Translations under genes and position numbers: made by a program
NCBI GenBank assembly: GCA_907165135.1
Contig: CAJRAX010000007.1
Coordinates: 67,585-131,584, forward strand
Direction of reading: 5' to 3'
DNA length: 64,000 nucleotides
Origin: Oikopleura dioica
Lineage: Eukaryota > Animalia > Chordata
Part shown: positions 2,328 through 54,000 of the stretch, piece after piece
Numbering within the stretch: position 1 is the first letter of the stretch
Layout of the letters: every line of letters starts with the position of its first letter
Notes under the pieces: generated by a model
What the model saw: the letters and a program-made list of their open reading frames with translations, nothing else
Databases searched by the model: none
Told to the model about the DNA's origin: nothing

Positions 2328-3366
2328 TGATAATAATAGGCAAAAGAACAATACAAAAAATCGAAAAAAAAATTATTCTTTATCACGGCCCGTTTTCGCC
2401 AATTCGGATAATTATTTGCATGAAAATCACGAATGCGTTAAATCGGACATTGGAGCCAGTTCGAATTCTGCTGGTAAAAATGAGACCATTTTTATCTTAT
2501 TTTTGTAACGTACGCGTTATCACAAAACTCTGAAGGCACATTAGCCACCCGCTTATGCGGTTTTGTTAACCCTTTTCAGTATTTCTAGGATTCCGAATTT
2601 ATTCTTTGCTCAAATTTAATTTCACCTTTCTTAACTTATTTTGAACTTTCAATTTATCCTGTAAGTATCTACTGAACGATTCTCGCTGGACTCATCCCCT
2701 TCCCTTACTCGACAAGCTGTATGGACTTTCATCCTCTCGCAGAGTTCCGCTTTTGCGGCTTGACACTGTGACCCCGTGCCCCGCGGGATGGCGGTGTCAG
2801 TAAGTGCTCCGAGGTAGGCGACGTTTGTATGAACACTTTTTCGGCTCGATTTAAGACGACTGGCCCTCTTCTTGGATAACGACGAAAATGCGGCTTCAAC
2901 AACTTCGACAGCTTCGACAACTACGACTACTACGACTTGGACAAATGCTATGGACTGACAACGATTATGGAACTGGAATCAGCAAAAATACTTATCAGAA
3001 TGTGATATGGTCACATAGTGAGAAGTTGATCATTCTGATTAGTAATTATTGGCAACGAGCGGCTTTATTTTTGGGAACGAAAAATATCGAAAGAAGAAAA
3101 CATGGAAGAAAATCGGTGCAACTTTCGCGGCGCCATATTTGGAAAGAAAATAAACACGCGAAATGCGTGAAATCGCCTTATTTGGAAATTTAAACATCTG
3201 CGCGAAATTTCATTTGAAAATTTGAACTTTGAAAAATCACTCTTCGTCTTACCAAAAATAATAAAGCCGTCTTCGTTATTTTTCTCGACTCATCCTTAGC
3301 AAGCTGCAATTAGCTTAATTAGTAATTTTTGATTAGCGCCAGTGAGAAAACGCAGAATTTGCATCA
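2328..3366 (+). repeat. 3' LTR of element A (~1039 bp, TGATAA...GCATCA)
   Basis: Boundaries inferred from alignment with the D junction (TGGCCATAC|TGATAA vs TGGTCATAC|TGATAC) and from the satellite start; shares internal blocks with the D LTR. The partner LTR is not in the window. Confidence 0.8.
2742..2818 (+). ncRNA. Putative structured cis-acting RNA element in LTR A, ending in a 5' splice-site-like GAG|GTAGGC
   Basis: Hairpin CCGC-TTTT-GCGG, stem TGACACTG/CGGTGTCA, inner CCCG/CGGG; covaries with B, C, D and E. Confidence 0.6.
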
Positions 3367-6300
3367 CTGTAAATTATCTGAAAACGCCAAAAAACGCATC
3401 AGAATTTTTTTTTATTTTTTTTTTTATTTATTTGAACTGTAAATCATCTGAAAACGCCAAAAACGCATCAGAATTTTTCTTAATTTTTTCGATTTTTTGA
3501 ACTGTAAATCATCTGAAAACGCCAAAAACGCATCAGAATTTTTCTTTATTTTTTTATATTTTTAAGAATTGTAAACCATCTGAAAACGCCAAAAAACGCA
3601 TCAGAATTTATATTTATTTTTCTTTATTTTTATGAACTGTAAATCATCTGAAAACGCAAAAAACGCATCAGAATTTTTATTTTTTTATTTTTATGAACTG
3701 TAAATCATCTTAAAACGCAAAAAACGCATCAGAATTTATATTTATTTTTTTATTTTTATGAACTGTAAATCATCTGAAAACGCCAAAAACGCATCAGAAT
3801 TTTTTAATTTTTTATTTTTATGAACTGTAAATTATCTGAAAACGCCAAAAACGCATCAGAATTTTTTTAATTTTTTCTATTTTTATGAACTGTTAATCAT
3901 CTAAAAACGCCAAAAAACGCATCAGAATTTTTCTTAATTTTTTCGATTTTTTAAACTGTCAATTATCTGAAAACGCCAAAAAATGCATCAGAATTTTTAT
4001 TAATTTTTTTTTTATTTTTATGAATTGTAAATCATCTAATACGGCAAAAAACGCATCAGAATTTTTCTCAATTTTTTTATTATTTTTATGAACTGTAAAT
4101 CATCTGAAAACGCAAAACAACGCATCAGAATTTTGATTAATTTTTTTTTATGAACTGTAAATCATCTGAAAACGCCAAAAACGCATCAGAATTTTTTTAT
4201 TTTTTTATTTTTATGAACTGTAAATCATCTGAAAACGCCAAAAACGCATCAGAAATTTTCTTAATTTTTTCGATTTTTTGAACTGTAAATTATCTGAAAA
4301 CGCCAAGAAACGCATAAGAATTTTTTAATTTTTTATTTTTATGAACTGTAAATCATCTGAAAACGCCAAAAACGCATCAGAATTTTTCTTTATTTTTTGA
4401 TTTTTGAACTGTTAATTATCTAAAAACGCCAAAAACGCATCAGAATTTTTTTAATTTTTGTTTTTATTTTTTGAACTGTAAATCATCTGAAAACGCCGAA
4501 AAACGCATAAGAATTTTTCTTAATTTTTTCGATTTTTTGAGCTGTAAATTATCTGAAAACGCCAAAAACGCATCAGAATTTTTTAATTTTTTATATTTTT
4601 ATGAACTGTAAATCATCTAAAAACGCCAAAAACGCATCAGAATTTTTATTGTTTTTTTTTTTTTATTTTTATGAACTGTTAATCATCTGAAAACGCCAAA
4701 AAACGCATCAGAATTTTTTTATTTTTTTTTTTATGAACTGTAAATCATCTGAAAACGCCAAAAACGCATCAGAATTTTGATTAATTTTTTATTTTTATGA
4801 ACTGTAAATCATCTGAAAACGCCAAAAAACGCATCAGAATTTTTTTAATTTTTTTTTATTTTTATGAACTGTAAATCATCTGAAAACGCCAAAAAACGCA
4901 TCAGAATTTTTTTTAATTTTTTATTTTTATGAACTGTAAATCATCTGAAAACGCCAAAAAACGCATCAGAATTTTTCTTAATTTTTTTTTTTTTTGAACT
5001 GTAAATCATCTGAAAATGCCAAAAACGCATCAGAATTTTTCTTAATTTTTTCGATTTTTTGAACTGTAAATCATCTGAAAACGCCAAAAACGCATCAGAA
5101 TTTTTTAATTTTTTTTATTTTTATGAACTGTAAATCATCTGAAAACGCCAAAAACGCATCTGAATTTTTTTATTTTTTTATTTTTATGAACTGTAAATCA
5201 TCTGAAAACGCCAAAAAACGCATCAGAATTTTTTTATTTTTTATTTTTATGAACTGTTAATTATCTGAAAACGCCAAAAACGTATCAGAATTTTTTTATT
5301 TTTTTAAATTTTTATGAACTGTTAATCATCTTCAAACGCCAAAAACGCATCAGAATTTTTTTATTTTTTTATTTTTATGAACTGTAAATTATCTAAAAAC
5401 GCCAAAAAACGCATCAGAATTTTTTTAATTTTTTGTTTTTATGAACTGTAAATCATCTGAAAACGCCAAAAAACGCATCAGAATTTTTCTTAATTTTTTT
5501 TTATTTTTTTGAACTGTAAATCATCTAAAAATGCCAAAAAACGCATCAGAATTTTTCTTAATTTTTTTCGATTTTTTTGAACTGTAAATCATCTGAGAAC
5601 GCCAAAAAACGCATCAGAATTTTTTTTAATTTTTTTTTTTATTTTTATGAACTGTAAATTATCTGAAAACGCCAAAAAACGCATCAGAATTTTTTTTAAT
5701 TTTTTTTCATTTTTATGAACTGTAAATCATCTAAAAACGCCAAAAAACGCATCAGAATTTTTCTTAATTTTTTTCGATTTTTTCAAACTGTCAATTATCT
5801 GAAAACGACAAAAAATGCATCAGAATTTTTATTAATTTTTTATTTTTATGAATTGTAAATCATCTAATACGGCAAAAACGCATCAGAATTTTTCTCAATT
5901 TTTTTATTATTTTTATGAACTGTAAATCATCTGAAAACGCAAAACAACGCATCAGAATTTTGATTAATTTTTTTTTTATTTTTATGAACTGTAAATCATC
6001 TGAAAACGCCAAAAAACGCATCAGAATTTTTTTTAATTTTTTTTTTTATTTTTATGAACTGTAAATCATCTGAAAACGCCAAAAAACGCATCAGAATTTT
6101 TCTTAATTTTTTTTATTTTTTTGAACTGTAAATCATCTGAAAATGCCAAAAAACGCATCAGAATTTTTCTTAATTTTTTTCGATTTTTTGAACTGTAAAT
6201 TATCTGAAAACGCCAAGAAACGCATAAGAATTTTTTTTAATTTTTTTTTTTATTTTTATGAACTGTAAATCATCTGAAAACGCCAAAAAACGCATCAGAA

Positions 6301-6997
6301 TTTTTCTTTATTTTTTTTGATTTTTGAACTGTTAATTATCTAAAAACGCCAAAAAACGCATCAGAATTTTTTTTTAATTTTTGTTTTAATTTTTTTGAAA
6401 TGTAAATCATCTGAAAACGCCGAAAAACGCATCAGAATTTTTCTTAATTTTTTTCGATTTTTTTGAGCTGTAAATTATCTGAAAACGCCAAAAACGCATC
6501 AGAATTTTTTAATTTTTTATATTTTTATGAACTGTAAATCATCTAAAAACGCCAAAAAACGCATCAGAATTTTTATTGTTTTTTTTTTTTATTTTTATGA
6601 ACTGTTAATCATCTGAAAACGCCAAAAAACGCATCAGAATTTTTTTATTTTTTTTTTATTTTTATGAACTGTAAATCATCTGTAAACGCCAAAAAATGCA
6701 TCAGAATTTTTCTTAATTTTTTTCGATTTTTTTAAACTGTCAATTATCTGAAAACGCCAAAAAACGCATCAGAATTTTTTTATTTTTTTTTTATTTTTAT
6801 GAACTGTAAATCATCTGTAAACGCCAAAAAACGCATCAGAATTTTTCTTAATTTTTTTCGATTTTTTTAAACTGTCAATTATCTGAAAACGCCAAAAAAT
6901 GCATCAGAATTTTTATTAATTTTATTTTTATGAATTGTAAATCATCTAATACGGCAAAAAACGCATCAGAATTTTTCTCAATTTTTTTGTTTATTTC
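3367..6997 (+). repeat. Satellite I tandem array (~60-70 bp unit, about 55 copies), forward orientation
   Basis: Repeated GAACTGTAAATCATCTGAAAACGCCAAAAAACGCATCAGAATT plus T-rich tract; variants recur in a fixed order. Confidence 0.97.
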
Positions 6998-8167
6998 TGA
7001 TACCGACTAAAGAATCTCTCCCTGCGATGTAAATACTTGCAAGTAAAATTCGAAAATAATTTTTTGCTTTTTCGTGGATTTATTTGGAAACGTGAATGAT
7101 TTTCAAAATTTCAAATTTTTGAAGAATAGTATTTTTAAACCGGTTGGTTCCGGATTTTCCATTGTTCCGTCGATGGCGCCATTACGGGCCTTTGTGCTTC
7201 TTACATAATCAATTGATGCCAATTTTTATCTTTTTACGTAACGGTTAATAAATAGACAGTTACATAACTATGTTACGTTTCTTTTCATTTTTTTCATTTT
7301 TGTTGATTTCTTGCCACATGTGGCGCTTTTTCCCAGTTATGAAAAATAAGAGCTTCTCACTATGTGACCACTCATATTTTTCATAATTAGCAAAGTTGTC
7401 GTTTTTGTCAAAGTCCGTTGTCCATGTCCAGTGTCAGTCCAAGCCAGTCCGTTGTCCGTGTTGTAGTTGAAGTTGTTGAAGAAGAAGTTGTCGCCATCGC
7501 CGGTCCATTGTGTAGCCATGATTTCTGTTAATTGGTCAAGTTAACTAGAAAACGCAGCCGTAACAGCTCATCAACGATTTTGATTACCTGGGAGCGCTTA
7601 TGACCACGGTTTACCGGTTTGGGATATTCTGCCCGCGGTTACTTTGTGATCAGCCCTTACGGGAAGCTCAGCCAGTAAGAATCTGTGTTCCAACTTTTCC
7701 GTCGTTGTCGAAGCCATTTGAGATCATCCTTCAGTCGTTGATTTTGACACAGAATAATTAATAAAATCAAGAAATTTTCCGAAAGACACGAGTTAACTTT
7801 GAAATCATAGAAGAAGGCTAATATTGTTTTCTTAAAGAAATTTATTTCTTTCCGATTTTTGAAAACATAAATATCCTAAAACAGTTAATAATAAAACCTT
7901 TTAAAAGCCCTTGACAGTAAGACTTTTAAAAGGCGCGGCTAATGTGCCTTTGAGTAAATATAATCGACGCGTACGTAGACACAATCCTAAAGGTATAAAG
8001 ACTCTTTATAACCTTTGCCCTGACTATTCTACTTAGACCCTGATTCAAAGTAAATTTGAACCATAAGAAACTGATCTGGCTCGTAAGATCATTATAATTC
8101 TAGTGTGATATTTTAATTTTGGCCGTGAAATATTTTTTTTTTGGACCGTTCTCCTCATTAGGTATCA
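6998..8167 (-). repeat. 3' LTR of element B (TGATACC...GGTATCA)
   Basis: Direct repeat of 14177-15346 with a 7-bp terminal inverted repeat. Confidence 0.96.
7582..7669 (-). ncRNA. Putative structured RNA element in LTR B (second copy 14761-14848), ending CAG|GTAATC
   Basis: On the minus strand: CCC-GTAA-GGG hairpin, stem TGATCAC/GTGGTCA, inner ACCG/CGGT and GGG/CCC. Confidence 0.55.
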
Positions 8168-8230
8168 CTGTGACCACACCTAGGGTCATAGACGAGCATC
8201 TTTTCCTATAAGAACGTGTTTTTCAAAGAA

Positions 8231-11200
8231 CTAAATGTTTGGCTGAAATAAAAGTCTGTCATTTTCACGAGGATGTTTCGGATGTTTTATAAGCATTTCG
8301 GAATCAATAAATTCAGTCAATAGAGTTTTTGAAGAGAATTGAATTTTACCGAGAGAATAAAATGATGCCAAACATTTAAGTTCTGCAACAGATAAATCTG
8401 ATAGAAAACATTTTTTTTCTAGGCGAAAAAACGCATAGAAACAAGTTTTCACCATTTTTATTCTTATGCAAACGGGGATGATTCTCGTTTATCCAACATT
8501 TAATCCTTGCTATCAATTCGGCTTTATTTTCAGCTGGCGAAAATTCTACACCTAATTTTGAAAGAACTACTCAAAGAGATTCTTTTGGTACGTCTTTTTG
8601 ATTTAACACGCAGCCATTACCGATTATCGAATTATATTTATATTCTGTAAATCTTTCGATTTTTTCAAAAAGATCTGGATGCTCATTTTCAAGTATTACA
8701 TGCAGGGTGAGATCATTAAAATCGATCATGTGATGATCTTGTGGGTTAAGTTGTTTTTTTGATAATTCTAACAATTCCCCCGGTAATTTGAGTAAATCGA
8801 TTGTTAAAAAATCTGCCTCAGCCCGCAAATTCTCGTCCTCAGCCATTTCCTTTCCAAGATTTTTTTTATGTTTAAGCCTAACTAGTGGATCTGTTTGATT
8901 TATCCTAGGAGTTTCGAAGGTATCATCAGAAGAAAATTCATAATTTTCATAATTGCCTTTTTTTTGAAATCTGCTGATCAGGCTCAGAATTATCCGAGTT
9001 TTCTCGTTGTCTCTTTCCAAAAGGTTTGGAGCTTTCAAGTTCAGATAAACACAATTTATCATATGATGTTAAATCTCTATCGGAAACCTGGACACTACTT
9101 TCGTTATTATCTAACTCATTAGTCTCTATATTATCATCTCCACTCCCGAGAATAGGATTATTACCATTTGCTGACGCGATTATTTCAAGCTCAGAATTTT
9201 CTAAGGTTTCAGTCAAATCTAAAATTTGTGGATTCAGGTCGGAGGGGACAACATTCCCAAGCATCGAATTTTCAGATCCACCCTGAATCTCTCTCCCGTT
9301 GATTGAATCATTATCCGATGTATAATGGTCCGAACTATGATCTAAATTACTCGATACGCTTAGCGAATGATTGACCCTATTGATCTCTCTTCCATACTGA
9401 TAAATAAAATTTTCTGATAGCATTGAATCTAAAGACATCTCATTGAATCCCGAATCAGAATGAATCATCGAATCCTTGTTTCCAGGGTTAGAATTTGAGA
9501 GAAAATCATTGTTATTTTCCGACAAACAAGGGATCTCTTTCCGTTCATTGAAAACTCGAAGATCATCTGCATGTCTTCTAAAAATTTTTCCTGATGATTC
9601 CTCCTGAACAACAAATGTTGTTGCCGTTTTCTCTGTAACAATAAATGGTCCCAAAAACGGAGGTGATTTGGAGCGAAAATTTCTGATTAAAACTTTATCA
9701 CCAATAGCGTATTCTCGATAATTATTATTTTGAAATTTTTGACATCGCAGTCGTTTCTCGTTATCAATTAATTTTTTAATTTCCTGAAAATCAAAATGAT
9801 TTGCTTGCATATATTCTCTCCAATTCGAATCATGAAAAGTGTGAGGATTTTTTATTCCATTCTCAATCGAAAAAGGACTCAACTTAGTGACTGAATGTTG
9901 TGAGCTATTTATCTCATGTAATATTTCAAAAATATATTGATCCCAATTAATAAACGCGCAACGAGCTTTCAATCTATTTTTGATGGTTCTATTAGCGTTC
10001 TCGCAAGCTCCATTCGTCGAAGGATGCCTTGGTGGGCTACGATTCATTTTAATACCATTCTTTTTGCAAAAATCATCAATCTTGCAGAATTCTGGAGCAT
10101 TATCAAATAAAACTAAGCGCGGGAATAAAGGATTTCTAAAAATAATTGCCTTGAATTTTTCTAAAAGAATGTCAGATTTTTTAGAATTAACCGGCTCCGC
10201 GTATATCTTTTTCGAGAAAAATCAACAGCTGTAAAAGCATAAATGTTTCCCGAATCAGTTATTCTAAGGGGGCCAATCATATCAAATCCCAATTCTTGCC
10301 AAGGGCCAGATGGTGTGGGAAAGGTTTTTACAGGCGCTTTGTTTGGATGAGTATTTGTTTTATGTATTTGGCAAAAAGGACATGACTTTATATAGTCCGC
10401 GATTGAATTTTTCATTTTACTCCAAAAATATTTCCTAGCGATTTTAGAAAAAGTTATTTCCGTGCCCAAATGACATGAATCATGGTACTCCTTGATTATT
10501 TCTTTCTGCATTATTTCTGGAACGCAAATTCTAAAACTACCTTCTGATTTAAGTGCTAACTCCCCAGAATCAAGAAAAAACAATTCCTTCCGGAAAAGAG
10601 AAAAGAGGGAGATTTCTTGAGACGGTTTGTTCGGCCAACGATCTAGTCGAACAAAAGCACGAATGTCTTTCAAAACTGGATCTAACTTTTGCATTTCTAA
10701 AAATTGTGCTTTGTCAATTTTCAACTGGGAAATTCTCGAATTTCTTGACAAACAGTCAGATATTTTCATCTGACTAGACTTTTTATGAATAATTTGAAAA
10801 TCAAACGACATTAGATCTGCCATCCACCTTTGAAGTCGTGAATTATTTGTCCGAAACGATTTTACATATTTTAGATTAGCATTGTCCGTCAAAAAATCAA
10901 AACGACGAAATTTTAAGAAAACCGACCATTTATCCATACTTAAACGAGCCGCAAGCATCTCTTTTTCGAGGGTTGTATATTTTATTTGAGACTCTGAAAA
11001 ATTTCCAGAATTATATGCTACTGGCCTCAAACAATTTTCATTATGATAATGAGTTTCTCTTGAATCGTCTGAAATACATATATAGAGAACACCGCCGAAT
11101 CCCGTATCAGAACTATCAGTTTCAAGAACGAATTTTCCATTTTCAGGCGGCGCTATCGTTAACTCTAGGGCTTTATCAGTAATTTCCTCCTTAAGATTTT

Positions 11201-20709: not shown

Positions 20710-20750
20710 ATAATGGTAGCCATTTAGGCCAGAATGAACTACCAATTATT
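20700..20750 (+). promoter_or_regulatory. -1 frameshift signal of C (T_TTA_AAC plus hairpin; second copy at 28284-28334)
   Basis: Heptamer abuts the gag TAA; the -1 frame reads LNNGSHLG..FLVDTGS; stem AATAATGGTAG/CTACCAATTATT. Confidence 0.75.
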
Positions 20751-33023: not shown

Positions 33024-33223
33024 TATTTTTCCAGCAATTTTCCAAATCATGAGCGAGTTGATAATGAGCTTTTATTTAGTCCTGACACGGAAGTATAAAT
33101 TTTTCTTTCGCTAGGGTAGCTCGAGACAGAAGTTATTTTAATCATCTTTTAAGAGAATTATACCGTTGATCACTGTCAAAAAAAAAGGAAGAAAAATAGT
33201 TCCAGACCCGTAAGTGGTCACAG

Positions 33224-35645: not shown

Positions 35646-35734
35646 TTTTTTTTTAATTTTTTTAAAAAAATTTTAAAATAATTTAATTTTATATAAATTT
35701 ACTTTAATTATTAATTTTATTAATAATTTAAAAA
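35646..35734. other. Almost pure A/T spacer where satellite orientation flips
   Basis: About 90 nt with a single C; forward units on the left, reverse units on the right. Confidence 0.8.
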
Positions 35735-43318: not shown

Positions 43319-44345
43319 TGATACGAATAAAGGAAAGAACACAAGAAAAAAATGAAAAATTGAATATCCCAGTCACATAAATATTTTCGCCAATTAGGTT
43401 GATTAGGCATGAATTTCACAGTTTTATGTTCCGACGATTTTCGGAGCCAAATCTCGGATGCTTGCATGAATTCATAAATCTCTATTTTTCCCTCATAACG
43501 TACGCGTTATTTCACAAATCAAAGGCACATTAGCCACCCGTTTCGGCGGTTCTTTATTTAACTCTTTCTAGTGCTCACTACTTCTTTTATTTAATTTTTG
43601 AACTGGTAATTATTATTGATGAATCAAGCTGACTCTTCTATGTCTTCAAAACGATGATGGCAATTCTTCTTGACGATAAAAAATCGATCGGCATTTTCTA
43701 CTACTACAACAGAGCTGTTGCATGGATTTCATCCTCTAGCTGAGTTCCGCTCTGCGGCTTGACAGTGTGACCCCGTGCTCCTCGGGATGGCGCTGTCTGT
43801 AAGTACTCCTAGGTAGGCAAAATTGATTGAACACCTTTCTGGCTCGCTTAAGGGAAGCTGACCACTCTCCTCAAAACCGACAGAATTGCAGCTTCAACAA
43901 TGGCGGCGACTTCTCTGGCAACAACGACGACTACGCAATGGACTGACAACGATTATTGGAACTGGCTTTGGAAAAGTATTAGTAAAAATTCATTAAATTC
44001 TATCAAAAAGGGATATGGCCACATAGTGGGAAGTTGAACTTTTTGATAAAATTTATTTCTTGGGATTAATTTCGAAGCGAACGTGGCTGTTTCGGCGAAT
44101 TTCGATTGACAGAAAAACAATTGCGCGAAAAGCGCTCACCATATTTGGAAAGAAAAACATGGCGCGAAATGCGCCGCGCCTTATTTGGAAAGAAACGCAC
44201 CTGCGCGAAATGCGAATTGAAAATTTGAAAATTTGAAAAATCACTCTCTCCATACTCAAAATAATACAGCCACGTTTTGAAATTTTGGCGTCATTCTTTG
44301 CAAGAATTCTAGCTTAGAGAGCATTTGAGCAGCAAATCGGTATCA
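43319..44345 (+). repeat. 5' LTR of D
   Basis: TGATAC...GTATCA; direct repeat of 50045-51071. Confidence 0.96.
43742..43818 (+). ncRNA. Putative structured RNA element in LTR D (second copy 50468-50544), ending TAG|GTAGGC
   Basis: CCGC-TCT-GCGG hairpin, stem GACAGTG/CGCTGTC (compensatory relative to A), inner CCCG/CGGG. Confidence 0.6.
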
Positions 44346-45412
44346 TGGTGAACACGCAAGACTCCAACTTCAAGGTAAATAAAATGCCCGAAGAATTACT
44401 TTTTGCCACTTTTCCGTCCCTCAATTCTCGTCAATTTTTTCGGCCTAATATGCTGTCTTATGAATTTACAATTTCCAAGAATAATTTGAGCGATAAAATT
44501 TCTGCAATGCGAAAAATTTTTGACAAAAGTATTAAGGATCACAATCGAGAGTCCGACCGCAATAATTTAGAAAAAGCTTTTGACAGACAAGTCGTAGACT
44601 GCATTCGCAATAATTGCTCTCACGAATTTATGAATAATTATGGGCGGGAAATGGCAAATTTCGAAAATATGGATGAAGTTTTTGATTTCCTGGAATCTGT
44701 TTTCGGAAGTGAATCTGAGGAAGAAAAGCGAGAGCGGGCGGGAGTCGAACTAGAAAACCTTTGTCGACGATCGGAAATGAATGAGAAGTTTTCGTCATTT
44801 TTGACACGAATTAAAACCGTCGCCGAGCTTATTTCTGATAAACAAGATGCTAGAGACTTTATTATCAACGCTCACTTTATGAAAAGCCTTGAGCCAGCGA
44901 ATAAGTCGTTTTTACGTGATCATGGAGTCAGTAAAAAGAGTGCTCAGGAGATTGCCACATTTTTGGACTCACGGGAGCGATTTTTGACTGTGAATGTTTC
45001 TTCGATCGAGTCGGCAAATCTTGCGTCCTTTGTTGATCGAACGAGCGAACTTTTGGATTCAAAATTGACTCAGATGGAATCAAATTATGAGCGCAAAAAT
45101 TCGGAATTACTTGAACAGATAAAACAATTAACAGCGACTGTAGCAAAGATAGAGCTCGAAAAGAAGGTCAAAAATGAGGAAATTAGCAGGCCAGCTAACC
45201 CGCCGGCCTCAGCAAATTTTATTCCGCCGTTTCCGTTCAGATTCCAGCAACCTCCCCAAGCGGCCCCTTTTTGCCGAAATTGCCAACAATGGGGTCATGT
45301 TAAGCCGAGGTGCCCCAAAATTAAATGCTACGAGTGTCAGGGTTTTGGTCATATCGGGCGAAACTGCTTGAAACGACGGGAAAATAGCACTCAGGATCAA
45401 TCAAAAAACTAA
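44345..45412 (+). CDS. gag: gag of D, 355 aa, two CCHC zinc knuckles
   Basis: CRNCQQWGHVKPRC and CYECQGFGHIGRNC; homologous to B Gag; the A of ATG is the last LTR base. Confidence 0.93.
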   Translation: MVNTQDSNFKVNKMPEELLFATFPSLNSRQFFRPNMLSYEFTISKNNLSDKISAMRKIFDKSIKDHNRESDRNNLEKAFDRQVVDCIRNNCSHEFMNNYGREMANFENMDEVFDFLESVFGSESEEEKRERAGVELENLCRRSEMNEKFSSFLTRIKTVAELISDKQDARDFIINAHFMKSLEPANKSFLRDHGVSKKSAQEIATFLDSRERFLTVNVSSIESANLASFVDRTSELLDSKLTQMESNYERKNSELLEQIKQLTATVAKIELEKKVKNEEISRPANPPASANFIPPFPFRFQQPPQAAPFCRNCQQWGHVKPRCPKIKCYECQGFGHIGRNCLKRRENSTQDQSKN

Positions 45413-45450
45413 ATTTTGGAACGAATTCTGGTCAAATTTCCGTTCCAAAA
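45403..45450 (+). promoter_or_regulatory. -1 frameshift signal of D (A_AAA_AAC plus 10-bp stem)
   Basis: Heptamer 45403-45409 before TAA; TTTTGGAACG (45414-45423) pairs with CGTTCCAAAA (45441-45450); the -1 frame leads to FLLDTGS. Confidence 0.8.
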
Positions 45451-48400
45451 ATCTCCATCAATAAAATAGGCGAACAATTTTATGTAACTGTAAATATTTT
45501 TAATTCACCTGTTCGATTTTTATTAGATACTGGATCACAATTAAATTGCATTTGTAAGAAAAACATACCAAAAAACATAAAAATCCAAAAAACAAAAACT
45601 GAAGCGGTAAATTACTCCGGCGGACAAATTGATATTTTGGGAAAGGTCGAAGCGGATATCATCATTGAAAATGTAAATTGGGGAAAATCAGAATTTTACG
45701 TTGTTCCTGACAATTTGAGCCCTATTTTGGGAGTGCCAGCTATTCAAGATAACGAGATAATGATAAACCTTCACCGTCGTAAAATAATTCAATCAGGACC
45801 AATTGAACGGTTTGCAAAACTTAATCAAATTAAAACAGACGATAATTTTGAAATCAACGAGGACAAAAATAAGGATCGTGAATATGATGGTTTTTCTACC
45901 GATAACTTTTCTTTTAGGCCTAAATCAGAATGCATAATTGATTTGAAAATCAAAGATCTTGAAAAATCGAAAAGTCTTTCATTTGATCAGTCTAATCTAG
46001 GAAATTCTAAATTGCAGCTTATCCCAAGCTTTCAAGTTGTCGATAAAAATTGCCCAAAATTTCGTCTTCTTATTATAAATCCAACAGACACAGTCATCAA
46101 AATTCCTGCGGGTACAGTTTTTGTTAAATTACATGAAATCGTTGAAATAGCGAGAATAAAAAACATAAAGCATAAAAACCTTAAAAATATTTCCGTCGGT
46201 AAAATTAACTCTTCAAAAATAAAAATTGATTTTGACGCTCTTTTAGATGATTTTGCACATCTTTTGTTGGACGAGGATGACTCGCTTCCAGAATGTACAA
46301 TTGAAAAATTTTCAATAGACACAGATACAGACTTCCCCATTTCTTCAGCCCCGTTTCGCACTCCTTTTAGCTTGAGGAATGTTTTAAGAGATCTTTTGGA
46401 TAAATTTATGGATAATAAATTTATAGAGCGATGTTCTAGCCCGTGGAATAGTCCGAGTATTCTTGTAAGAAAAAAAGATGGACGATTTCGTCTTGTCATT
46501 GATTTCAGAAAGTTAAATGATGTGACTATTCAGATGCACTACCCCCTGCCAAATTTAGAGGATTCGTTGTCGTATTTAGATAAAAGTACTATTTTCTCTT
46601 CGATAGACCTTATTAAGGGGTTTCATCAGATCGCTTTAACAGAAGAATCAAAAGATAAAACGGCATTTTCGAACGAGTTCGGTCAATTTAGATTTTTACG
46701 CATGCCTATGGGCTGTCGAAATGCACCAAGTTTTTTCATGAGAGTAATTGATCAGGCACTAAAAGGTGTAGATAAAACCGAAATATTACCGTACATGGAC
46801 GATATTCTTATTCATAGTAAAACAGAACAAGAGCATTTTTTGAACCTCAAAAAATTTTTTCATATTCTAGATGCGAATAATCTTAGGATAAACTCTCGAA
46901 AAGCTTCATTTTTTACAAGGTCGGTGACATTTTGTGGCTATTTTATTTCTCAGGGTAATATTTCTCCTTCAACGGATAAAATTCAGGCTATAAGAAATCT
47001 TAAAATTCCTAGTTCTAAGGAGAGTGCGCAAAGTCTTTTTGGACTTTTAAACTTTCATCGTAGATTTATAAAAAATTTTTCGGCAATAGCATTACCAATT
47101 ACAAAAACTTGGAGAAACGGGTTTAAATGGACAGACGAGGCTTCGAGCGCGTTAAGCAAGCTTCAAAATATTATATGCGATAATGCAATGAAGCTCAAAA
47201 TACCCCCAGTAGACAATGCGCTTTTCGTTTTAGAGACAGACGCGTCAAATAATGCATACGGTGGGGTACTCTATATTTGTGAAAAAAATTGTAGGGATAA
47301 TTCTCATCACCATTCTAGTGAGTGTTTGATCCCTGTAGGCTATAACAGTGGTAATTTTAACGAAACTCAATCACGATACACAATTATAGAAAAAGAATTA
47401 TTTTCCGCCAAACAATGCATGATGAAGTGGTCAATCTATCTTTCTTACAATAGTTTTGATTGGATTACAGATAATTCAAACATTAAATACGTTCGAACAC
47501 TAAGAACCTATAATCAAAAAATCACGAGATGGATAACGGAAATTCAAGGATTTAATTTTAGAACAATTCAAAAACCCTCGTCAAAAATGCAGATAAGTGA
47601 CTGTTTGAGTAGACAAACTACGATTCAAAATCAGCCCCTTATAAATTCAATTAAAATAACTCAAAAACAATTTTGCGAGCTTCAGATGCTTGATCCTCTT
47701 TTAACCGAGATAAGAAAATTTTTGACGATAGATAGATGGCCTCACAATCCATCAGGTGATATAACATTTTATTGGCTTTTGAGAGAAAATTTGACTATTT
47801 CGGAAAATGATCAAATTATTTTTTTCGATGATTCAGGAAATAGACGGATTTTAGTTCCAAAAAGTTTAGAGAGTGAACTTATTAAAAATTACCATGAATA
47901 TTGCCACGCTGGAATCGATCAAGTTTTTTCAAAAATATCCGTCAAGTATATATGGCCTAGAATGCGTCAAGCAATAAGAGAATTTGTTAGAACATGTTCG
48001 TATTGTCAAAAAGATAAGCCTGATTTTCACCCCAATAAAGCGCCGGTTTTGACCTTCAAAACACCAAACGGACCTTTTGAAGTTTTTGGATTCGATCTGA
48101 TCACGTTACCTCCAACTGATCATGGAAATAAATATGTAATGGTAATGATCGATTTTTTCTCGAAATTCGGATATTGTGAACCTCTTAAATCTCGTAATTC
48201 TAAATATCTCCTTGAAAAATTTAAAAGTGTGATTTTCAAAAATCCAATTTATCCAAAAATTGTTGTGCTCGACAATGCTAGGGAACATTCAGAGATCGAG
48301 AAATTTATGAAAGAAAATCATATAGACCCTCATTTTACTCCTCCAAGGCATCCTTCTTCTAATGGGCAAGTGGAAAATTATAATCGAACCCTTAAAAGTA

Positions 48401-49983
48401 GATTACGTGCACGTTGTGGGTTAGTAAATTGGGATCAGAACCTTCAAGAGGTTGTCCATGACCTTAATTCAAGCGAGCATTCAGTCACGAAAACATCCCC
48501 TTATTCCCTTCAAATGGGCGTGAAAAACGCTCATGACATTTTTGATCCAAATTTTAGGGCTTCTTTCGAAAAAAGTGATATTGATTTTCAACAAATTAAA
48601 AAATTGATCGAAGATGAAAAACAAAATAGGCTTGAGAAATTTTCAAACCCAAAATTTGTGCCTTATCAAATCGGCGACATGGTTCTTATCAAAAATTTCG
48701 ACGCGAAAAAACCAGCTTTTCTTGGGCCGTATAAAATAAAAAATAAATCGAAAGAGGGAACTTGGTATACAGTCGCGTCTGATGATAAAGAGTTTCGGCG
48801 ACACGCTGATCATTTGAAAAAATTTAACGCGCGAAAAGAGGATTCGGAAGATTTAGGTCTCTCAGTTGAACTTCCAGATATTCAAGACGATTTTTCGACC
48901 TTCCACAAAGACAATGTTTTCGAGCGAGAAAGTTTTTCAAGTGGTTTTTATTCTTGTCCACCTATTTCAATGAAGGAAGATGAAATAGAAGAAAAAATGG
49001 ACAACATAGTTAATTCATTAATTGATATTGTTTTTGAGAATATTTTTTCAGACTTGATTGTTGATACACTTGAATCTATGGAATCTTCCTCTGAGGAAAG
49101 TTCTTGTGTATCAATAATCGAGAATGAACAGAGTTTAAGAGAGCCCGATAGTTCGCAAAATATTGAAGCGATACCTAAACCTGACGATTTTCCGGTCTCT
49201 GGGTCCCTTATTTCATCTGATTCGGAGTGGGAAATTGAGGAAAATTCTCATTGGGAAGTGACGGTAGACGAAGAATTATCTACGGTTGAAACAGAAACAG
49301 TCCATGAAAATATAATAACGGAAGATCAAGAACCCCTTATTTCTTACGATAAATTAGATATTTCGGCAAATCGGAAACGCGAAAGAGAATCATCGAAAGA
49401 CTCCATTCCTTGCTCTAAAATACCAAATTTAGACCCAAAAGATAGCTCTGATGAAGAGTCAAATGATAGGTCGGAAATGATTTGTGAAAACTTCGATACT
49501 TCAATAACATTTAAATTAGAAAACGAGCATGAAAGTTTTTTCCAGAGAATAGAATCGAGAATTGAGGAGCTTGAAGAGAATATGGCAATTGAAAATGGGT
49601 GTATTTTGAAGTTGGGTGAATTAACAAAAGAAGCACTTAGATTTATCTTGCATAAGTTTGATGTTCAATATTTGACAACGGAAACGATATCAGATCTAAG
49701 AATAAAAATAAGAGAGTATATTTGGAAAAATCACCCTAATTGGCGAAAAAATGCATGCGGAGAGTTATTATTCTTTTCAATTTTAAATTTGAAAAAGAAA
49801 AAAAAACTCTTTATGATTTGAAAAAACCTGAATTGAAAGTTCTTATTGCTGAGTATAACCTGCCAAAATGTGTTTTGCAAAATAAGTCAGAAATGATTTT
49901 ATTTATTAATTCTGCTTTTGAAAAATTATATCCGAATCATCCAAAAAAAGAACAATGATCTCATATTCGGACCAAATATCTAA
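45403..49983 (+). CDS. pol: pol of D (PR, dUTPase-like spacer, RT, RNase H, integrase, tandem C-terminal domain)
   Basis: LLDTGS upstream of the called start; YMDD, ETDAS, EKE, TDN, YHEYCH..CSYC, GFDLI, LDNA, NGQVENYNR, FLGPY; two A-run indels near 49800 and 49950 restore the ending PKKNNDLIFGPNI*. Confidence 0.94.
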
Positions 49984-50044
49984 TATTCAATTTGTTTCTT
50001 CCTTAAAAGATGCTCCGAAAAAAGATACCCATGAGTGGTCATAC

Positions 50045-51071
50045 TGATACGAATAAAGGAAAGAACACAAGAAAAAAATGAAAAATTGAATATCCCAGTC
50101 ACATAAATATTTTCGCCAATTAGGTTGATTAGGCATGAATTTCACAGTTTTATGTTCCGACGATTTTCGGAGCCAAATCTCGGATGCTTGCATGAATTCA
50201 TAAATCTCTATTTTTCCCTCATAACGTACGCGTTATTTCACAAATCAAAGGCACATTAGCCACCCGTTTCGGCGGTTCTTTATTTAACTCTTTCTAGTGC
50301 TCACTACTTCTTTTATTTAATTTTTGAACTGGTAATTATTATTGATGAATCAAGCTGACTCTTCTATGTCTTCAAAACGATGATGGCAATTCTTCTTGAC
50401 GATAAAAAATCGATCGGCATTTTCTACTACTACAACAGAGCTGTTGCATGGATTTCATCCTCTAGCTGAGTTCCGCTCTGCGGCTTGACAGTGTGACCCC
50501 GTGCTCCTCGGGATGGCGCTGTCTGTAAGTACTCCTAGGTAGGCAAAATTGATTGAACACCTTTCTGGCTCGCTTAAGGGAAGCTGACCACTCTCCTCAA
50601 AACCGACAGAATTGCAGCTTCAACAATGGCGGCGACTTCTCTGGCAACAACGACGACTACGCAATGGACTGACAACGATTATTGGAACTGGCTTTGGAAA
50701 AGTATTAGTAAAAATTCATTAAATTCTATCAAAAAGGGATATGGCCACATAGTGGGAAGTTGAACTTTTTGATAAAATTTATTTCTTGGGATTAATTTCG
50801 AAGCGAACGTGGCTGTTTCGGCGAATTTCGATTGACAGAAAAACAATTGCGCGAAAAGCGCTCACCATATTTGGAAAGAAAAACATGGCGCGAAATGCGC
50901 CGCGCCTTATTTGGAAAGAAACGCACCTGCGCGAAATGCGAATTGAAAATTTGAAAATTTGAAAAATCACTCTCTCCATACTCAAAATAATACAGCCACG
51001 TTTTGAAATTTTGGCGTCATTCTTTGCAAGAATTCTAGCTTAGAGAGCATTTGAGCAGCAAATCGGTATCA
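50045..51071 (+). repeat. 3' LTR of D
   Basis: Direct repeat of 43319-44345. Confidence 0.96.
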
Positions 51072-54000
51072 GACAGTTTAAAAAAATCGAAAAAAATTAA
51101 GAAAAATTCTGATGCATTTTTTGGCGTTTACAGATGATTTACAGTTCATAAAAATAAAAAAAAATAAAAAATTCTGATGCGTTTTTGGCGTTTTCAGATG
51201 ATTAACAGTTCATAAAAATAAGAAAAAAACAATAAAAATTCTGATGCGTTTTTGGCGTTTTTAGATGATTTACAGTTCATAAAAATATAAAAATAATTAA
51301 AAAAAATTCTGATGCGTTTTTTGGCGTTTTCAGATTATTGACAGCTCAAAAAATCGAAAAAATTAAAAAAATTCTGATGCGTTTTTGGCGTTTTCAGATA
51401 ATTAACAGTTCAAAAATCAAAATAAATAAAGAAAAATTCTGATGCGTTTTTTGGCGTTTTCAGATGATTTACAGTTCATAAAAATAAAAAAAAAAAAATT
51501 AAAAAAAATTCTGATGCGTTTTTTGGCGTTTTCAGATGATTTACAGTTCAAAAAATCGAAAAAATTAAGAAAAATTCTGATGCGTTTTTTTTGGCGTTTA
51601 CAGATGATTTACAATTCATAAAAATAAAAAAAAAAAATTAAAAAAGATTCTGATGCGTTTTTTGGCGTTTTCAGATGATTTACAGTTCAAAAAATCGAAA
51701 AAATTAAGAAAAATTCTGATGCGTTTTTGGCGTTTTCAGATGATTTACAATTCATAAAAATAAAAAATTAAAAAATTCTGATGCGTTTTTGGCGTTTTCA
51801 GATGATTTACAGTTCAAAAAATCGAAAAAATTAAGAAAAATTCTGATGCGTTTTTTGGCGTTTTCAGATGATTTACAATTCATAAAAATAAAAAAAAAAA
51901 TTAAAAAAATTCTGATGCGTTTTTTGGCGTTTTCAGATAATTTACAGTTCAAAAAATAGAAAAAATTAAGAAAAATTCTGATGCGTTTTTGGCGTTTTCA
52001 GATGATTTACAATTCATAAAAATAAAAAATTAAAAAATTCTGATGCGTTTTTGGCGTTTTCAGATGATTTACAGTTCAAAAAATCGAAAAAATTAAGAAA
52101 AATTCTGATGCGTTTTTTGGCGTTTTAGATAATTTACAGCTCAAAAAAATCGAAAAAATTAAGAAAAATTCTGATGCGTTTTTGGCGTTTTCAGATGATT
52201 TACAGTTCAAAAAAATCGAAAAAAATTAAGAAAAATTCTGATGCGTTTTTTGGCATTTTCAGATGATTTACAGTTCAAAAAAATAAAAAAAATTAAGAAA
52301 AATTCTGATGCGTTTTTTGGCGTTTACAGATGATTTACAGTTCATAAAAATAAAAAAAAATTAAAAAAAATTCTGATGCGTTTTTTGGCGTTTTCAAATG
52401 ATTTACAGTTCATAAAAATAAAAAAAAAATTAATCAAAATTCTGATGCGTTGTTTTGCGTTTTCAGATGATTTACAGTTCATAAAAATAATAAAAAAATT
52501 GAGAAAAATTCTGATGCGTTTTTTGCCGTATTAGATGATTTAAAATTCATAAAAATAAAAAAAAAATTAATAAAAATTCTGATGCATTTTTTGGCGTTTT
52601 CAGATAATTGACAGTTTAAAAAATCGAAAAAATTAAGAAAAATTCTTATGCGTTTTTGGCGTTTTTAGATGATTTACAGTTCATAAAAAAAAAAAAATTA
52701 AAAAAATTCTGATGCGTTTTTTGGCGTTTTCAGATAATTTACAGTTCATAAAAATAAAAAAAAAAATTAAAAAAATTCTGATGCGTTTTTGGCGTTTTCA
52801 GATGATTTACAGTTCATAAAAATAAAAAAATAAAAAAATTCTGATGCGTTTTTGGCGTTTTCAGATGATTTACAGTTCATAAAAATAAAAAAAATTAAAA
52901 AAATTCTGATGCGTTTTTGGCGTTCTCAGATGATTTACAGTTCAAAAAATCGAAAAAAATTAAGAAAAATTCTGATGCGTTTTTTGGCATTTTCAGATGA
53001 TTTACAGTTCAAAAAAATAAAAAAAAATTAAGAAAAATTCTGATGCGTTTTTTGGCGTTTTCAGATGATTTACAGTTCATAAAAACAAAAAAAAAAATTA
53101 ATAAAAATTTTGATGCGTTTTTTGGCGTTTTTAGATAATTTACAGTTCATAAAAATAAAAAAAAAATAAAAAAAATTCTGATGCGTTTTTTGGCGTTTTA
53201 AGATGATTTACAGTTCATAAAAATTTAAAAAAAAATCAAAAAAAATTCTGATACGTTTTTTGGCGTTTTCAGATGATTTACAGTTCATAAAAATAAAAAA
53301 AAAAAATTAAATAAATTCTGATGCGTTTTTTGGCGTTTTCAGATGATTTACAGTTCAAAAAAATAAAAAAATTAAGAAAAATTCTGATGCGTTTTTGGCG
53401 TTTTCAGATGATTTACAGTTCATAAAAATAAAAAAAATTAAAAAAATTCTGATGCGTTTTTGGCGTTTTCAGATGATTTACAGTTCATAAATATAAAAAA
53501 ATTAAAAAAATTCTGATGCGTTTTTGGCGTTTTCAGATGATTTACAGTTCATAAAAATAAAAAAAATTAAGAAAAATTCTGATGCGTTTTTGGCGTTTTC
53601 AGATGATTTACAGTTCATAAAAATAAAAAATTAAAAAAATTCTGATGCGTTTTTTGGCGTTTTTAGATGATTAACAGTTTATAAAAATAAAAAAAAAAAA
53701 ACAATAAAAATTCTGATGCGTTTTTTGGCGTTTTTAGATGATTTACAGTTCATAAAAATATAAAAAAAATTAAAAAATCTGATGCGTTTTTGGCGTTTTC
53801 AGATAATTTACAGCTCAAAAAATCGAAAAAATTAAGAAAAATTCTGATGCGTTTTTCGGCGTTTTCAGATGATTTACAGTTCAAAAAAATAAAAACAAAA
53901 ATTAAAAAAAAATTCTGATGCGTTTTTTGGCGTTTTTAGATAATTAACAGTTCAAAAATCAAAAAAAATAAAGAAAAATTCTGATGCGTTTTTTGGCGTT

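What the first reader, a model, noticed from the sequence alone, without database searches (positions are those of the whole stretch)
3360..51076. A multi-family clade of gypsy elements that appears to target one short window of a subtelomeric satellite
Seen: five divergent families (A-E) each insert into satellite I and never into one another, although element DNA is more than half of the window. With the C of CTGT in the unit ATTTC-TATGAA-CTGTA-AATCAT-CTGAA as 0, the 5-bp target sites are B ATTTC (-11), A CTGTA (0, one flank only), D CTGTC (0), E GTAAA (+2) and C CTGAA (+11). Both orientations occur. The AAAACGC..AAAACGCATCAGAA block and the T-tract, more than half of the unit, are never hit. 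Established: Ty1, Ty3, Ty5, Tf1 and chromoviruses target via integrase tethering. Inference: this is a retrotransposon-satellite system in which the satellite acts as a landing pad at the chromosome end. n=5 and the window was defined post hoc.
Basis: partly seen in the sequence, partly recalled or inferred. Interest (0 to 1): 0.9.

Follow-up and report, generated by a model that had tools for sequence, protein, structure and literature searches.

The report
Gypsy elements inside a chromosome-end satellite
Five related retrovirus-like jumping genes each sit inside the same 68-bp repeat next to a telomere, at a few preferred spots of the repeat; the pattern is real, but five events are too few to prove that the repeat is a deliberate landing pad.

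Summary
The window is a chromosome end: TTAGGG telomere, about 18 kb of 68-bp (and 59-bp variant) AT-rich satellite, and about 44 kb of Ty3/gypsy DNA. Five independent insertions (A-E) lie in the satellite with 5-bp target duplications at offsets -11, 0, 0, +2 and +11. None is nested in another element, and both orientations occur. The many C pieces trace to one insertion, later duplicated and rearranged. A-D belong to one strongly supported clade whose nearest relatives are marine-metagenome elements; E is a solo LTR tied to it only by short LTR islands.

The statistics are suggestive, not decisive. P is 0.06 for the arc, 0.04 for three sites within 2 bp, about 0.05 for no nesting, and about 0.01 for three duplications starting with CTG. 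All tests are post hoc with n=5.

New here: every coding family carries a roughly 155-aa C-terminal Pol domain. It folds confidently, has no Pfam or PDB match, is found only on gypsy Pol, and resembles SAP/helix-extended-helix motifs only weakly. It sits where chromoviruses carry their chromodomain, so it is a candidate tether.

A simpler rival is integrase sequence preference: CTGWMAA is about 18 times denser in the 68-bp satellite than in element DNA. More copies from the same genome could not be obtained.

The parts
1..3366 (+). Element A, cut by the window start: integrase to Pol C-terminus (ORF 100-2274) and 3' LTR 2328-3366. Candidate target duplication CTGTA at 3367-3371 (one flank only).
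   Evidence: Pfam Integrase_H2C2 and rve. 54% aa identity to D over integrase, linker and C-terminal domain. LTR start and polypurine region parallel to D. LTR 69% identical to the D LTR over 590 bp.
1798..2271 (+). C-terminal Pol domain (about 155 aa) of A. This is the only copy in the window that reads through in one frame without a stop.
   Evidence: Alignment A1. AlphaFold2 mean pLDDT 90.9, pTM 0.84. No Pfam or PDB sequence match. Weak SAP/HeH-like fold matches only. Only 49 representative proteins among 1.84 billion carry it; in nearly all of them it ends within a few residues of the C-terminus, and seven of the eight checked carry RT/RNase H/integrase or integrase Pfam domains.
3367..6997 (+). 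68-bp satellite array, plus orientation.
   Evidence: TRF period 68, about 55 copies, 86% matches. Continuous coverage by the unit.
6998..15346 (-). Element B, full length. LTRs 6998-8167 and 14177-15346 (1165/1170 identical). Duplication ATTTC at 6993-6997 and 15347-15351. Pol is split into several ORFs.
   Evidence: C-terminal domain pieces at 8234-8723 lie in two frames.
15347..18054 (+). 68-bp satellite array, plus orientation.
18055..34633 (+). Element C as a tandem LTR-internal-LTR-internal-LTR array. LTRs 18055-19460, 25636-27045 and 33224-34633; period about 7585 bp. Duplication CTGAA at 18050-18054 and 34634-34638.
   Evidence: Pol frame changes near 25370 (copy 1) and 32568 (copy 2).
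34634..35666 (+). 68-bp satellite, plus orientation, ending at a 30-bp AT-rich junction (35667-35696) where the array flips orientation.
35697..40923 (-). Satellite in minus orientation: 68-bp units at 35697-36341 and 39269-40923, and a 59-bp variant (118-bp dimers) at 36342-39268 with no insertion.
   Evidence: The variant has almost no CTG[TA][AC] sites (1.0 per kb).
40924..42216 (-). Element E, solo LTR of 1293 bp. Duplication TTTAC (= GTAAA) at 40919-40923 and 42217-42221.
   Evidence: Short collinear islands shared with the B LTR on the same strand, and with the A and C LTRs on the opposite strand.
42217..43318 (-). 68-bp satellite, minus orientation.
43319..51071 (+). Element D, full length. 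LTRs 43319-44345 and 50045-51071 (1027/1027 identical). Gag 44345-45412, Pol 45637-49821. Duplication GACAG (= CTGTC) at 43314-43318 and 51072-51076. The C-terminal domain (about 49516-49980) changes frame in an A-run starting at 49791 and again near 49950.
51072..54827 (-). 68-bp satellite, minus orientation. Its last 1 kb is the inverted duplicate of the flank of C.
54828..61443 (.). Patchwork of C fragments:
- inverted LTR plus internal part, 54828-58144
- inverted internal piece, 58167-58400
- direct LTR end, 58401-58752, with its satellite flank 58753-59117
- direct internal part plus 901 bp of LTR, 59121-61443.
All derive from the single C insertion.
61441..64000 (+). Telomere (TTAGGG)n, added inside a truncated C LTR at a TTA microhomology.

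Best explanation
The window is the end of a chromosome. A clade of Ty3/gypsy retrotransposons has inserted at least five separate times into a 68-bp AT-rich satellite next to the telomere.

I think the most likely reading is a real integration bias toward this satellite, working in two layers:
1. Regional bias. This could come from the Pol C-terminal module: a long acidic linker with a conserved short motif, followed by a novel domain of about 155 aa with SAP/helix-extended-helix-like parts. Like the chromodomain of chromoviruses or the integrase C-terminal region of Tal1, it could hold the integration complex on satellite chromatin or on AT-rich DNA.
2. Local choice of cut site by the integrase itself, favouring CTG(T/A)(A/C)AA-type sites. 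This would place A and D at 0, C at +11 and E two bases away.

Shown:
- The anatomy, the target duplications and the offsets.
- The single origin of all C pieces.
- The clade, and the existence, fold confidence and restricted distribution of the domain.

Inferred:
- That the bias is in integration rather than in survival.
- That the domain has anything to do with it.
For: - Five clean insertions into the satellite, none nested, although elements make up 68% of the window.
- Offsets cluster.
- The elements are young, so little time has passed for survival to sort them: LTR pairs are 1027/1027 identical in D, 1165/1170 in B and 1405-1409/1410 in C.
- A-D fall in three sublineages of one clade. 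Each is closer to marine-metagenome elements than to the others, so the shared location is not explained by one family copying itself.
- All four coding families keep the C-terminal domain. It folds at pLDDT 90.9.
- The domain occurs in only 49 representative proteins among 1.84 billion. In nearly all of them it ends within a few residues of the C-terminus, and seven of the eight checked carry RT/RNase H/integrase or integrase Pfam domains.
- The best fold matches, although weak, are repeatedly SAP/HeH DNA-binding motifs.
- An integrase C-terminal region is known to direct an LTR element into tandem repeats (PMC11735389).
Against: - n=5, and every test is post hoc. Single nulls give P of only 0.04-0.06.
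- No second locus of the same genome could be examined.
- The domain is near neutral in charge, has no significant structural match, and has no demonstrated function.
- None of the copies whose insertion sites are seen on both sides keeps the domain unbroken. It is interrupted in B, in D and in every C copy, and only the window-truncated A reads through.
- A sister-clade element with a divergent copy of the domain sits in non-satellite DNA in L004.
- B (ATTTC) and E (GTAAA) do not fit the CTG motif.
- Satellites turn over fast while the clade is old, so recognition of this particular sequence by a conserved domain is unlikely.
Confidence: 0.45

Rival explanations
1. There is no targeting. Elements insert more or less anywhere, and only copies landing in gene-free chromosome-end repeats persist. 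The phase clustering and the lack of nesting among five events are chance.
For: Each single test is marginal: P=0.061, 0.037 and about 0.05. The window and the 'short window' of the unit were chosen after seeing the data. The one related element with real flanks is not in a satellite.
Against: The elements are very young, leaving little time for sorting by selection. Survival in a safe region does not explain why none of five landed in the 68% of the window that is equally harmless element DNA. Three duplications share CTG (corrected P about 0.01).
Confidence: 0.3
2. The cause is plain sequence preference of the integrase, with no tether. The integrases of the A/D and C lineages prefer a short motif of the CTG(T/A)(A/C)AA type. 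The 68-bp satellite carries two such sites per unit, so it soaks up insertions because it is motif-dense. This resembles the short target motifs of insect gypsy-like elements (from my own knowledge).
For: Three of five duplications start with CTG at the only two such sites on that strand. The motif occurs 22.3 times per kb in the 68-bp satellite, 1.2 per kb in element DNA and 1.0 per kb in the insertion-free 59-bp variant. A and D use the same site in opposite orientations, as expected for a symmetric target choice.
Against: The motif was derived from the same three sites. B and E do not fit it. The third CTG site of the unit (on the other strand, inside the conserved block) is unused. A 7-bp preference alone would scatter copies over the whole genome, which cannot be checked here.
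Confidence: 0.15
3. The satellite is centromeric rather than merely subtelomeric (a telocentric chromosome). The elements are centromere-seeking, tracking centromeric chromatin as Tal1, ATHILA or CRM elements do.
For: Satellite arrays invaded by a few specific, young LTR families are the usual centromere picture. Integration into tandem repeats via CENH3 chromatin is demonstrated for Tal1 (PMC11735389). The arrays lie within 2-58 kb of the telomere, which fits a telocentric layout as well as a subtelomere.
Against: A 68-bp unit is short for a nucleosome-sized centromeric repeat. Nothing in the window marks a centromere. One chromosome end cannot tell the two apart.
Confidence: 0.1

Closest known systems
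Tal1 / ATHILA / CRM-type centromere-seeking LTR retrotransposons (Tal1: PMC11735389)
   Same: Young LTR elements of a few families insert into tandem-repeat arrays. For Tal1, the variable C-terminal region of the integrase sets the preference. Here too a distinctive C-terminal Pol module is the obvious candidate.
   Different: Tal1 is Ty1/copia and follows CENH3 chromatin at centromeres. These are Ty3/gypsy elements at a chromosome end, with a different, structured C-terminal domain. No experiment or chromatin data exist for them, and a preferred phase within the repeat unit is claimed only here.
Chromoviruses (Ty3/gypsy with an integrase C-terminal chromodomain)
   Same: Same superfamily and same position of the extra module, after the integrase GPY/F region. 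Both associate with repeat-rich, presumably heterochromatic DNA.
   Different: No chromodomain was detected. The module here is a linker of about 250 aa plus a new domain of about 155 aa with no Pfam match.
Ty5 of yeast (integrase targeting domain binding Sir4); from my own knowledge, cited in PMC7459421
   Same: An LTR element biased to telomere-proximal silent chromatin through a short motif in the integrase C-terminus. The conserved short linker motif here could play a similar part.
   Different: Ty5 is copia-type and its bias is regional, with no fixed nucleotide position. No Sir4-like partner is known here.
Insect gypsy-like elements with short sequence-specific target sites (gypsy, ZAM, 17.6/297); from my own knowledge, see PMC5408687 listed
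   Same: Ty3/gypsy integrases that choose short target motifs, which then appear as the duplication. This is the model for the motif-only rival.
   Different: Those motifs are alternating pyrimidine-purine or TATA-like. The insect elements carry env genes and are not tied to a satellite.
TRAS/SART telomeric-repeat-specific non-LTR elements of silkworm; from my own knowledge
   Same: Retroelements that use a tandem repeat at the chromosome end as a landing site, at fixed nucleotide positions and in defined phases.
   Different: They are non-LTR elements with a sequence-specific endonuclease, and they insert into the telomeric repeat itself. Here no insertion lies in the TTAGGG array.

Membership tests
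Ty3/gypsy (Metaviridae) LTR retrotransposon | Pol domain order RT - RNase H - integrase | tested here: met
   Pfam RVT_1, RT_RNaseH, Integrase_H2C2 and rve appear in that order in C and D. B shows RT, RNase H and H2C2. A shows H2C2 and rve.
Ty3/gypsy (Metaviridae) LTR retrotransposon | Direct LTRs ending TG...CA, flanked by a short target duplication | tested here: met
   LTR pairs of 1170, 1406 and 1027 bp end TGATAC...GTATCA. 5-bp duplications are present on both flanks of B, C, D and E.
Ty3/gypsy (Metaviridae) LTR retrotransposon | Primer binding site after the 5' LTR, purine-rich tract before the 3' LTR, and Gag with a CCHC knuckle | tested here: met
   TGG-starting primer binding sites in B, C and D. 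A conserved GTGGTCA(C/T)A(G/C) tract lies before the 3' LTR. zf-CCHC is found in the B and D Gag.
Ty3/gypsy (Metaviridae) LTR retrotransposon | Aspartic protease upstream of RT | tested here: inconclusive
   No Pfam protease hit in C or D Pol, although about 270-310 residues precede RT. A distant relative shows a weak gag-asp_proteas hit.
Chromoviruses | Chromodomain at the integrase C-terminus | tested here: not met
   No chromo-type Pfam match in any Pol or in the C-terminal domain, even at E<=10.
SAP / helix-extended-helix DNA-binding domains | Sequence or fold match to the roughly 35-aa SAP motif | tested here: inconclusive
   No Pfam or PDB sequence hit. Foldseek finds nothing at E<=0.001. 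Several of the leading weak matches are SAP-like: MANF/CDNF C-terminal domain, MKL1 SAP, ERI1, viral 'SAP domain' and Rho-N proteins. Separately, some unnamed viral proteins match over 35-43 columns at rmsd 0.5-2.4 A.
Satellite- or heterochromatin-targeted LTR elements (Ty5, Tal1, CRM type) | Genome-wide enrichment of independent or de novo insertions in the target compartment | not testable with these tools
   Only one 64-kb window of the genome is available. The families and the satellite are absent from the searchable collections. Within the window, 5 of 5 events are in the satellite (P about 0.05).
Satellite- or heterochromatin-targeted LTR elements (Ty5, Tal1, CRM type) | An integrase C-terminal determinant that binds a chromatin or DNA partner | not testable with these tools
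   A candidate module exists, but binding cannot be computed here.
Pol III-gene-targeted elements (Ty1, Ty3, DGLT-A type) | Insertion next to tRNA or other Pol III genes | tested here: not met
   No tRNA gene and no Rfam family anywhere in the window.
Telomeric-repeat-specific retroelements (TRAS/SART type) | Insertion within the telomeric repeat array itself | tested here: not met
   The TTAGGG array 61441-64000 holds no element. The C LTR abutting it is truncated and capped by the telomere, not inserted into it.

The most novel reading that the evidence does not exclude
A previously undescribed, structured C-terminal Pol domain (two helix-extended-helix-like motifs on a small sheet) defines an old clade of gypsy elements from marine eukaryotes. 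It steers them into chromosome-end satellite arrays at defined positions of the repeat unit. The satellite then serves as a shared, harmless landing pad for several co-existing lineages. This would be the gypsy, subtelomeric counterpart of the centromere-seeking Tal1 system, with a new kind of targeting module.
Probability: 0.2. Interest if true: 0.8.

Novelty: new variant of a known kind. Interest (0 to 1): 0.5.

Why it matters
How LTR elements pick safe places to land is understood for only a handful of yeast, plant and Dictyostelium elements. If this reading holds, it would add a fresh example from an unsampled marine lineage, in which three old sublineages share one tandem repeat at a chromosome end. 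It would also supply a compact, well-folding candidate targeting domain that can be expressed and tested directly.

The window also records what such elements do to a chromosome end: tandem element arrays, inverted duplications, and a telomere healed onto a broken LTR. If the pattern is instead only motif density or chance, the window remains a clean, well-annotated example of a repeat-rich subtelomere.

Tried and rejected
- Exact look-up of the D Gag in public assemblies: not on record.
- Whole-Pol homologue search: best hit 59% identity, all unnamed metagenome proteins. The source genome is therefore not in the collection.
- Satellite 25-mer scan of metagenome and viral contigs: no hit.
- Fetching contigs of relatives (L001-L003, L005-L021): nearly all are single elements collapsed on their LTR and carry no flanks, so they say nothing about targets. 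L004 is the only one with flanks, and it is not in a satellite.
- Satellite derived from the elements, or the reverse: rejected. Only weak AT-rich matches were found.
- Pol III-gene targeting: rejected. No tRNA or Rfam hits.
- The conserved block as the most constrained part of the unit, hence a protein-binding site: not supported. The hit region is just as conserved, and only the T-tract varies.
- Hidden relic insertions in the arrays that would raise n: none found.
- Paralogous empty sites: the rejoined flanks match other array stretches. The A flank has a 98% paralogue at 16908-17306, but this cannot confirm A's missing second flank.
- Pfam, PDB sequence and Foldseek searches of the C-terminal domain: no significant match.
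- Literature searches for this satellite or for SAP-type integrase modules: nothing specific.
- Host identity was not resolved. The contig is not human: it has an AT-rich 68-bp satellite and young gypsy elements whose only close relatives come from marine metagenomes.
Full report
WHAT THE WINDOW IS

The window is a chromosome end. It finishes in 2.56 kb of TTAGGG repeats (61441-64000). Inward of the telomere lie about 18 kb of AT-rich satellite. Most of it has a unit of about 68 bp, in plus orientation up to 35666 and minus orientation from 35697. A 59-bp variant occupies 36342-39268. The rest is 43.6 kb of LTR-retrotransposon DNA, 68% of the window. No tRNA gene, no Rfam family and no obvious host gene is present.

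I do not take the contig for human. It has an AT-rich 68-bp satellite and young gypsy elements whose only close relatives come from marine metagenomes.

OBSERVATION

Self-comparison and direct reading of the junctions give five insertion events.

| Element | Coordinates | Structure | Target duplication | Offset |
|---|---|---|---|---|
| A | 1-3366 | cut by the window start; 3' LTR 2328-3366 | CTGTA at 3367-3371 (one flank) | 0 |
| B | 6998-15346, minus strand | LTRs 1170 bp | ATTTC on both flanks | -11 |
| C | 18055-34633 | tandem LTR-internal-LTR-internal-LTR | CTGAA on both flanks | +11 |
| E | 40924-42216 | solo LTR | TTTAC on both flanks (= GTAAA on the satellite strand) | +2 |
| D | 43319-51071 | LTRs 1027 bp | GACAG on both flanks (= CTGTC) | 0 |

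- Joining left flank, one copy of the duplication and right flank gives sequences that align across the junction with other stretches of the array at 89-96% identity. B and C align over all 606 bases, E and D over all but 17-37 bases at one end.
- The arrays contain no other interruption except the 30-bp junction where orientation flips.
- No element is nested in another.
- Relative to the satellite, A, C and E have one orientation and B and D the other. E's strand is inferred from LTR islands.

The extra C material at 54828-61443 is not new insertions. It carries the same flank and consists of inverted and direct segmental copies of the one C insertion. The last fragment is capped by the telomere.

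IS IT MORE THAN CHANCE?

Null model: five points on a 68-bp circle.
- Smallest arc holding all five offsets (22 bp): P=0.061.
- Three points within 2 bp: P=0.037.
- Both together: P=0.011.
- No nesting, under sequential insertion into 18 kb of satellite plus the earlier elements: P about 0.05.
- Three of five duplications begin with CTG, which occurs at three positions per unit counting both strands. Raw tail 8e-4; about 0.01 after correcting for the choice of trinucleotide.

These tests overlap, and all were framed after seeing the data. I read them as suggestive.

THE ELEMENTS

- Pfam gives RT, RNase H, integrase zinc finger and integrase core in gypsy order.
- Gag has a CCHC knuckle.
- Primer binding sites start TGG, and a conserved GTGGTCA(C/T)A(G/C) tract precedes the 3' LTR.
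- B, C and D LTRs start TGATAC and end GTATCA. A (TGATAA...GCATCA) and E (...ATATCA) each differ by a base or two.
- The elements are young. LTR pairs are 1027/1027 identical in D, 1165/1170 in B and 1405-1409/1410 in C.
- A and D Pol are 54% identical; C and D are 48% identical.

In a maximum-likelihood tree, A-D fall inside one clade with 100% support. The clade has three sublineages: A with D, B, and C. Each is closer to unnamed proteins from seawater, Tara and JGI metagenomes than to the other window families. 'Multi-family clade' is therefore correct for A-D. E is a solo LTR linked to the others only by short islands.

None of the full-length copies has a wholly open Pol:
- D changes frame in an A-run starting at 49791 and again near 49950.
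- C changes frame near 25370 (copy 1) and 32568 (copy 2).
- The telomere-side C copy has an in-frame stop at 60344.
- B is split into several ORFs.

I searched the broken genes piece by piece. The majority lines that the alignment tools print were not saved or used.

A NEW C-TERMINAL MODULE

After the integrase core and the GPY/F-type region, Pol continues in two parts:
- about 250 acidic, serine-rich residues that contain one conserved short motif (L-x-S-Y-D-K-L-D ... K-R-x-R-E-S);
- a conserved domain of about 155 residues at the very end.

The domain is present in A, B, C and D (tblastn). Only A reads through it in one frame without a stop.

What the searches say about the domain:
- It has no Pfam match even at E<=10 and no PDB sequence match.
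- AlphaFold2 folds it confidently from an 11-sequence alignment: mean pLDDT 90.9, pTM 0.84. The model has two similar strand-helix-helix halves.
- Foldseek finds nothing significant in PDB or in BFVD. Several of the leading weak matches are SAP or helix-extended-helix domains: MANF/CDNF C-terminal domain, MKL1 SAP, ERI1, viral 'SAP domain' and Rho-N proteins. Some unnamed viral proteins also match over about 35-43 columns at rmsd 0.5-2.4 A.
- A profile search of 1.84 billion representative proteins finds it in only 49. In nearly all of them it ends within a few residues of the C-terminus. Of the eight checked against Pfam, seven carry RT/RNase H/integrase or integrase domains.
- A divergent copy is also present in the sister clade (hhalign probability 96.7%).
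- Its net charge is about neutral, with a conserved basic patch.

It occupies the place where chromoviruses carry a chromodomain, and where Ty5 and Tal1 carry their targeting determinants. That makes it a candidate tether and no more.

MECHANISM AND RIVALS

My preferred reading (0.45) is a real integration bias with two layers: regional attraction to the satellite through the C-terminal module, and local choice of CTG(T/A)(A/C)AA-type sites by the integrase.

Arguments for a real bias:
- The elements are young.
- None of five landed in element DNA.
- Three old sublineages share the same array.

Because the clade is old and satellites turn over quickly, I expect any tether to recognise chromatin, a host protein or AT-rich DNA shape rather than this particular sequence.

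Rivals:
- Survival in a gene-free region plus chance (0.3).
- Pure integrase sequence preference (0.15). It is simple and testable. The motif occurs 22.3 times per kb in the 68-bp satellite, 1.2 per kb in element DNA and 1.0 per kb in the insertion-free 59-bp variant. The satellite would then be a motif-dense sink with no tether. B and E do not fit the motif, and the motif was derived from the sites it explains.
- Centromere-type targeting on a telocentric chromosome (0.1). This cannot be excluded from one window.

Evidence against the tether idea:
- The one relative with genuine flanks (L004, LTRs at 1182-1501 and 7294-7616, Pol with a divergent copy of the domain) is not inside a satellite, although AT-rich tandem repeats lie within 0.4-1.5 kb on both sides.
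- None of the copies seen on both flanks keeps the domain unbroken.

COMPARISON WITH KNOWN SYSTEMS

The closest demonstrated analogue is Tal1 of Arabidopsis lyrata. It is a copia element whose integrase C-terminal region directs integration into centromeric tandem repeats through CENH3 chromatin (PMC11735389). From my own knowledge:
- chromoviruses share the superfamily and the position of the extra module, but the chromodomain is absent here;
- Ty5 shares the telomere-proximal bias;
- insect gypsy-like elements are the model for short target motifs;
- TRAS/SART share the idea of a terminal repeat used in fixed phase, but are non-LTR elements inside the telomeric repeat itself.

I therefore rate the finding as a possible new variant of a known kind, not a new category.

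WHAT COULD NOT BE DONE

The decisive census of all copies in the same genome was not possible.
- The D Gag and Pol and the satellite are absent from every searchable collection.
- Related contigs are single elements collapsed on their LTR.
- The host was not identified. The nearest named Pol relatives are insect and bivalve proteins at 27-28% identity, which hints at an invertebrate host but proves nothing.

A functional integration assay would need an intact element or integrase.

VERDICT

- Observation: confirmed.
- Interpretation: partly supported.
- Interest: 0.5, driven by the clean five-lineage pattern and by the new, well-folding Pol C-terminal domain, and held down by n=5 and by a simple motif-density rival.

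Noticed in passing
window 61410-61470 (compare 34091-34151): The telomere starts inside a C LTR. The intact LTR reads ...AATGCTTAATTT, while here ...AATGCTTA runs straight into GGGTTAGGG. This is de novo telomere addition at a TTA microhomology on a broken element (chromosome healing).
   Followed up: yes
window 54828-61443: The last 6.6 kb before the telomere is a patchwork of C fragments in both orientations, with a duplicated piece of C's satellite flank in the middle. It includes a 22-bp filler that forms a 21-bp tandem (58124-58167). The layout looks like repeated breakage and repair.
   Followed up: partly
window 31320-35663 versus 58144-53763; junction 35667-35696: A 4.4-kb inverted segmental duplication (98.5% identity) covers the end of C and its satellite flank. 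The satellite flips orientation across a 30-bp AT-rich spacer. Together these suggest a large palindrome-like rearrangement of the chromosome end.
   Followed up: partly
window 18055-34633: C is a tandem array sharing its middle LTR (LTR-internal-LTR-internal-LTR, period about 7585 bp). The two units are 99.87% identical. Unequal LTR recombination or recombinational insertion of a second copy could both produce this.
   Followed up: no
window 62121-62204 and scattered through 61441-64000: An 84-bp (GGTTT)n block sits inside the TTAGGG array, together with scattered TTAGG, TTGGG and TTAAGGG variant units.
   Followed up: no
window 36342-39268: The 59-bp satellite variant is organised as 118-bp dimers. 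It keeps the conserved AAAACGC...CATCAGAA block, loses most of the T-tract, and has CTA in place of CTG at both hot sites. It carries no insertion; about 0.8 would be expected, so this is uninformative.
   Followed up: partly
window 3006-3027 (A LTR), 14532-14549 (B LTR), 41340-41361 (E LTR): A 17-22-nt island (CTTCTCACTATGTGACC or its complement) is shared by otherwise unalignable LTRs of three families. It may be a conserved regulatory element.
   Followed up: no
window 44111-44214 and 50837-50940: A 40-bp tandem repeat (2.6 copies) with GCGCGC cores lies inside both D LTRs.
   Followed up: no
window 49791-49958: D has identical LTRs, yet its Pol changes frame in an A-run and again about 150 bp later. 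Homopolymer sequencing errors are as likely as real mutations.
   Followed up: no
Pol linker: A residues about 509-545 (window 1624-1734), also in C, D and the metagenome relatives: A conserved short motif (L-x-S-Y-D-K-L-D-I-S ... K-R-x-R-E-S-S-K-D-S) sits in an otherwise unalignable acidic linker. It could be a nuclear localisation signal or a partner-binding peptide.
   Followed up: no
L021 7868-10384: A distant relative that carries the same C-terminal Pol domain has an extra 838-aa ORF after Pol, possibly env-like. The window families have none.
   Followed up: no
L002, L003, L006, L012, L013, L016, L017, L018: Metagenome relatives keep the same LTR ends (TGATAC...GTATCA), TGG primer binding sites and the GGTCA(C/T)AG tract before the 3' LTR. 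The recognition sequences for the integrase are therefore conserved across the clade.
   Followed up: partly
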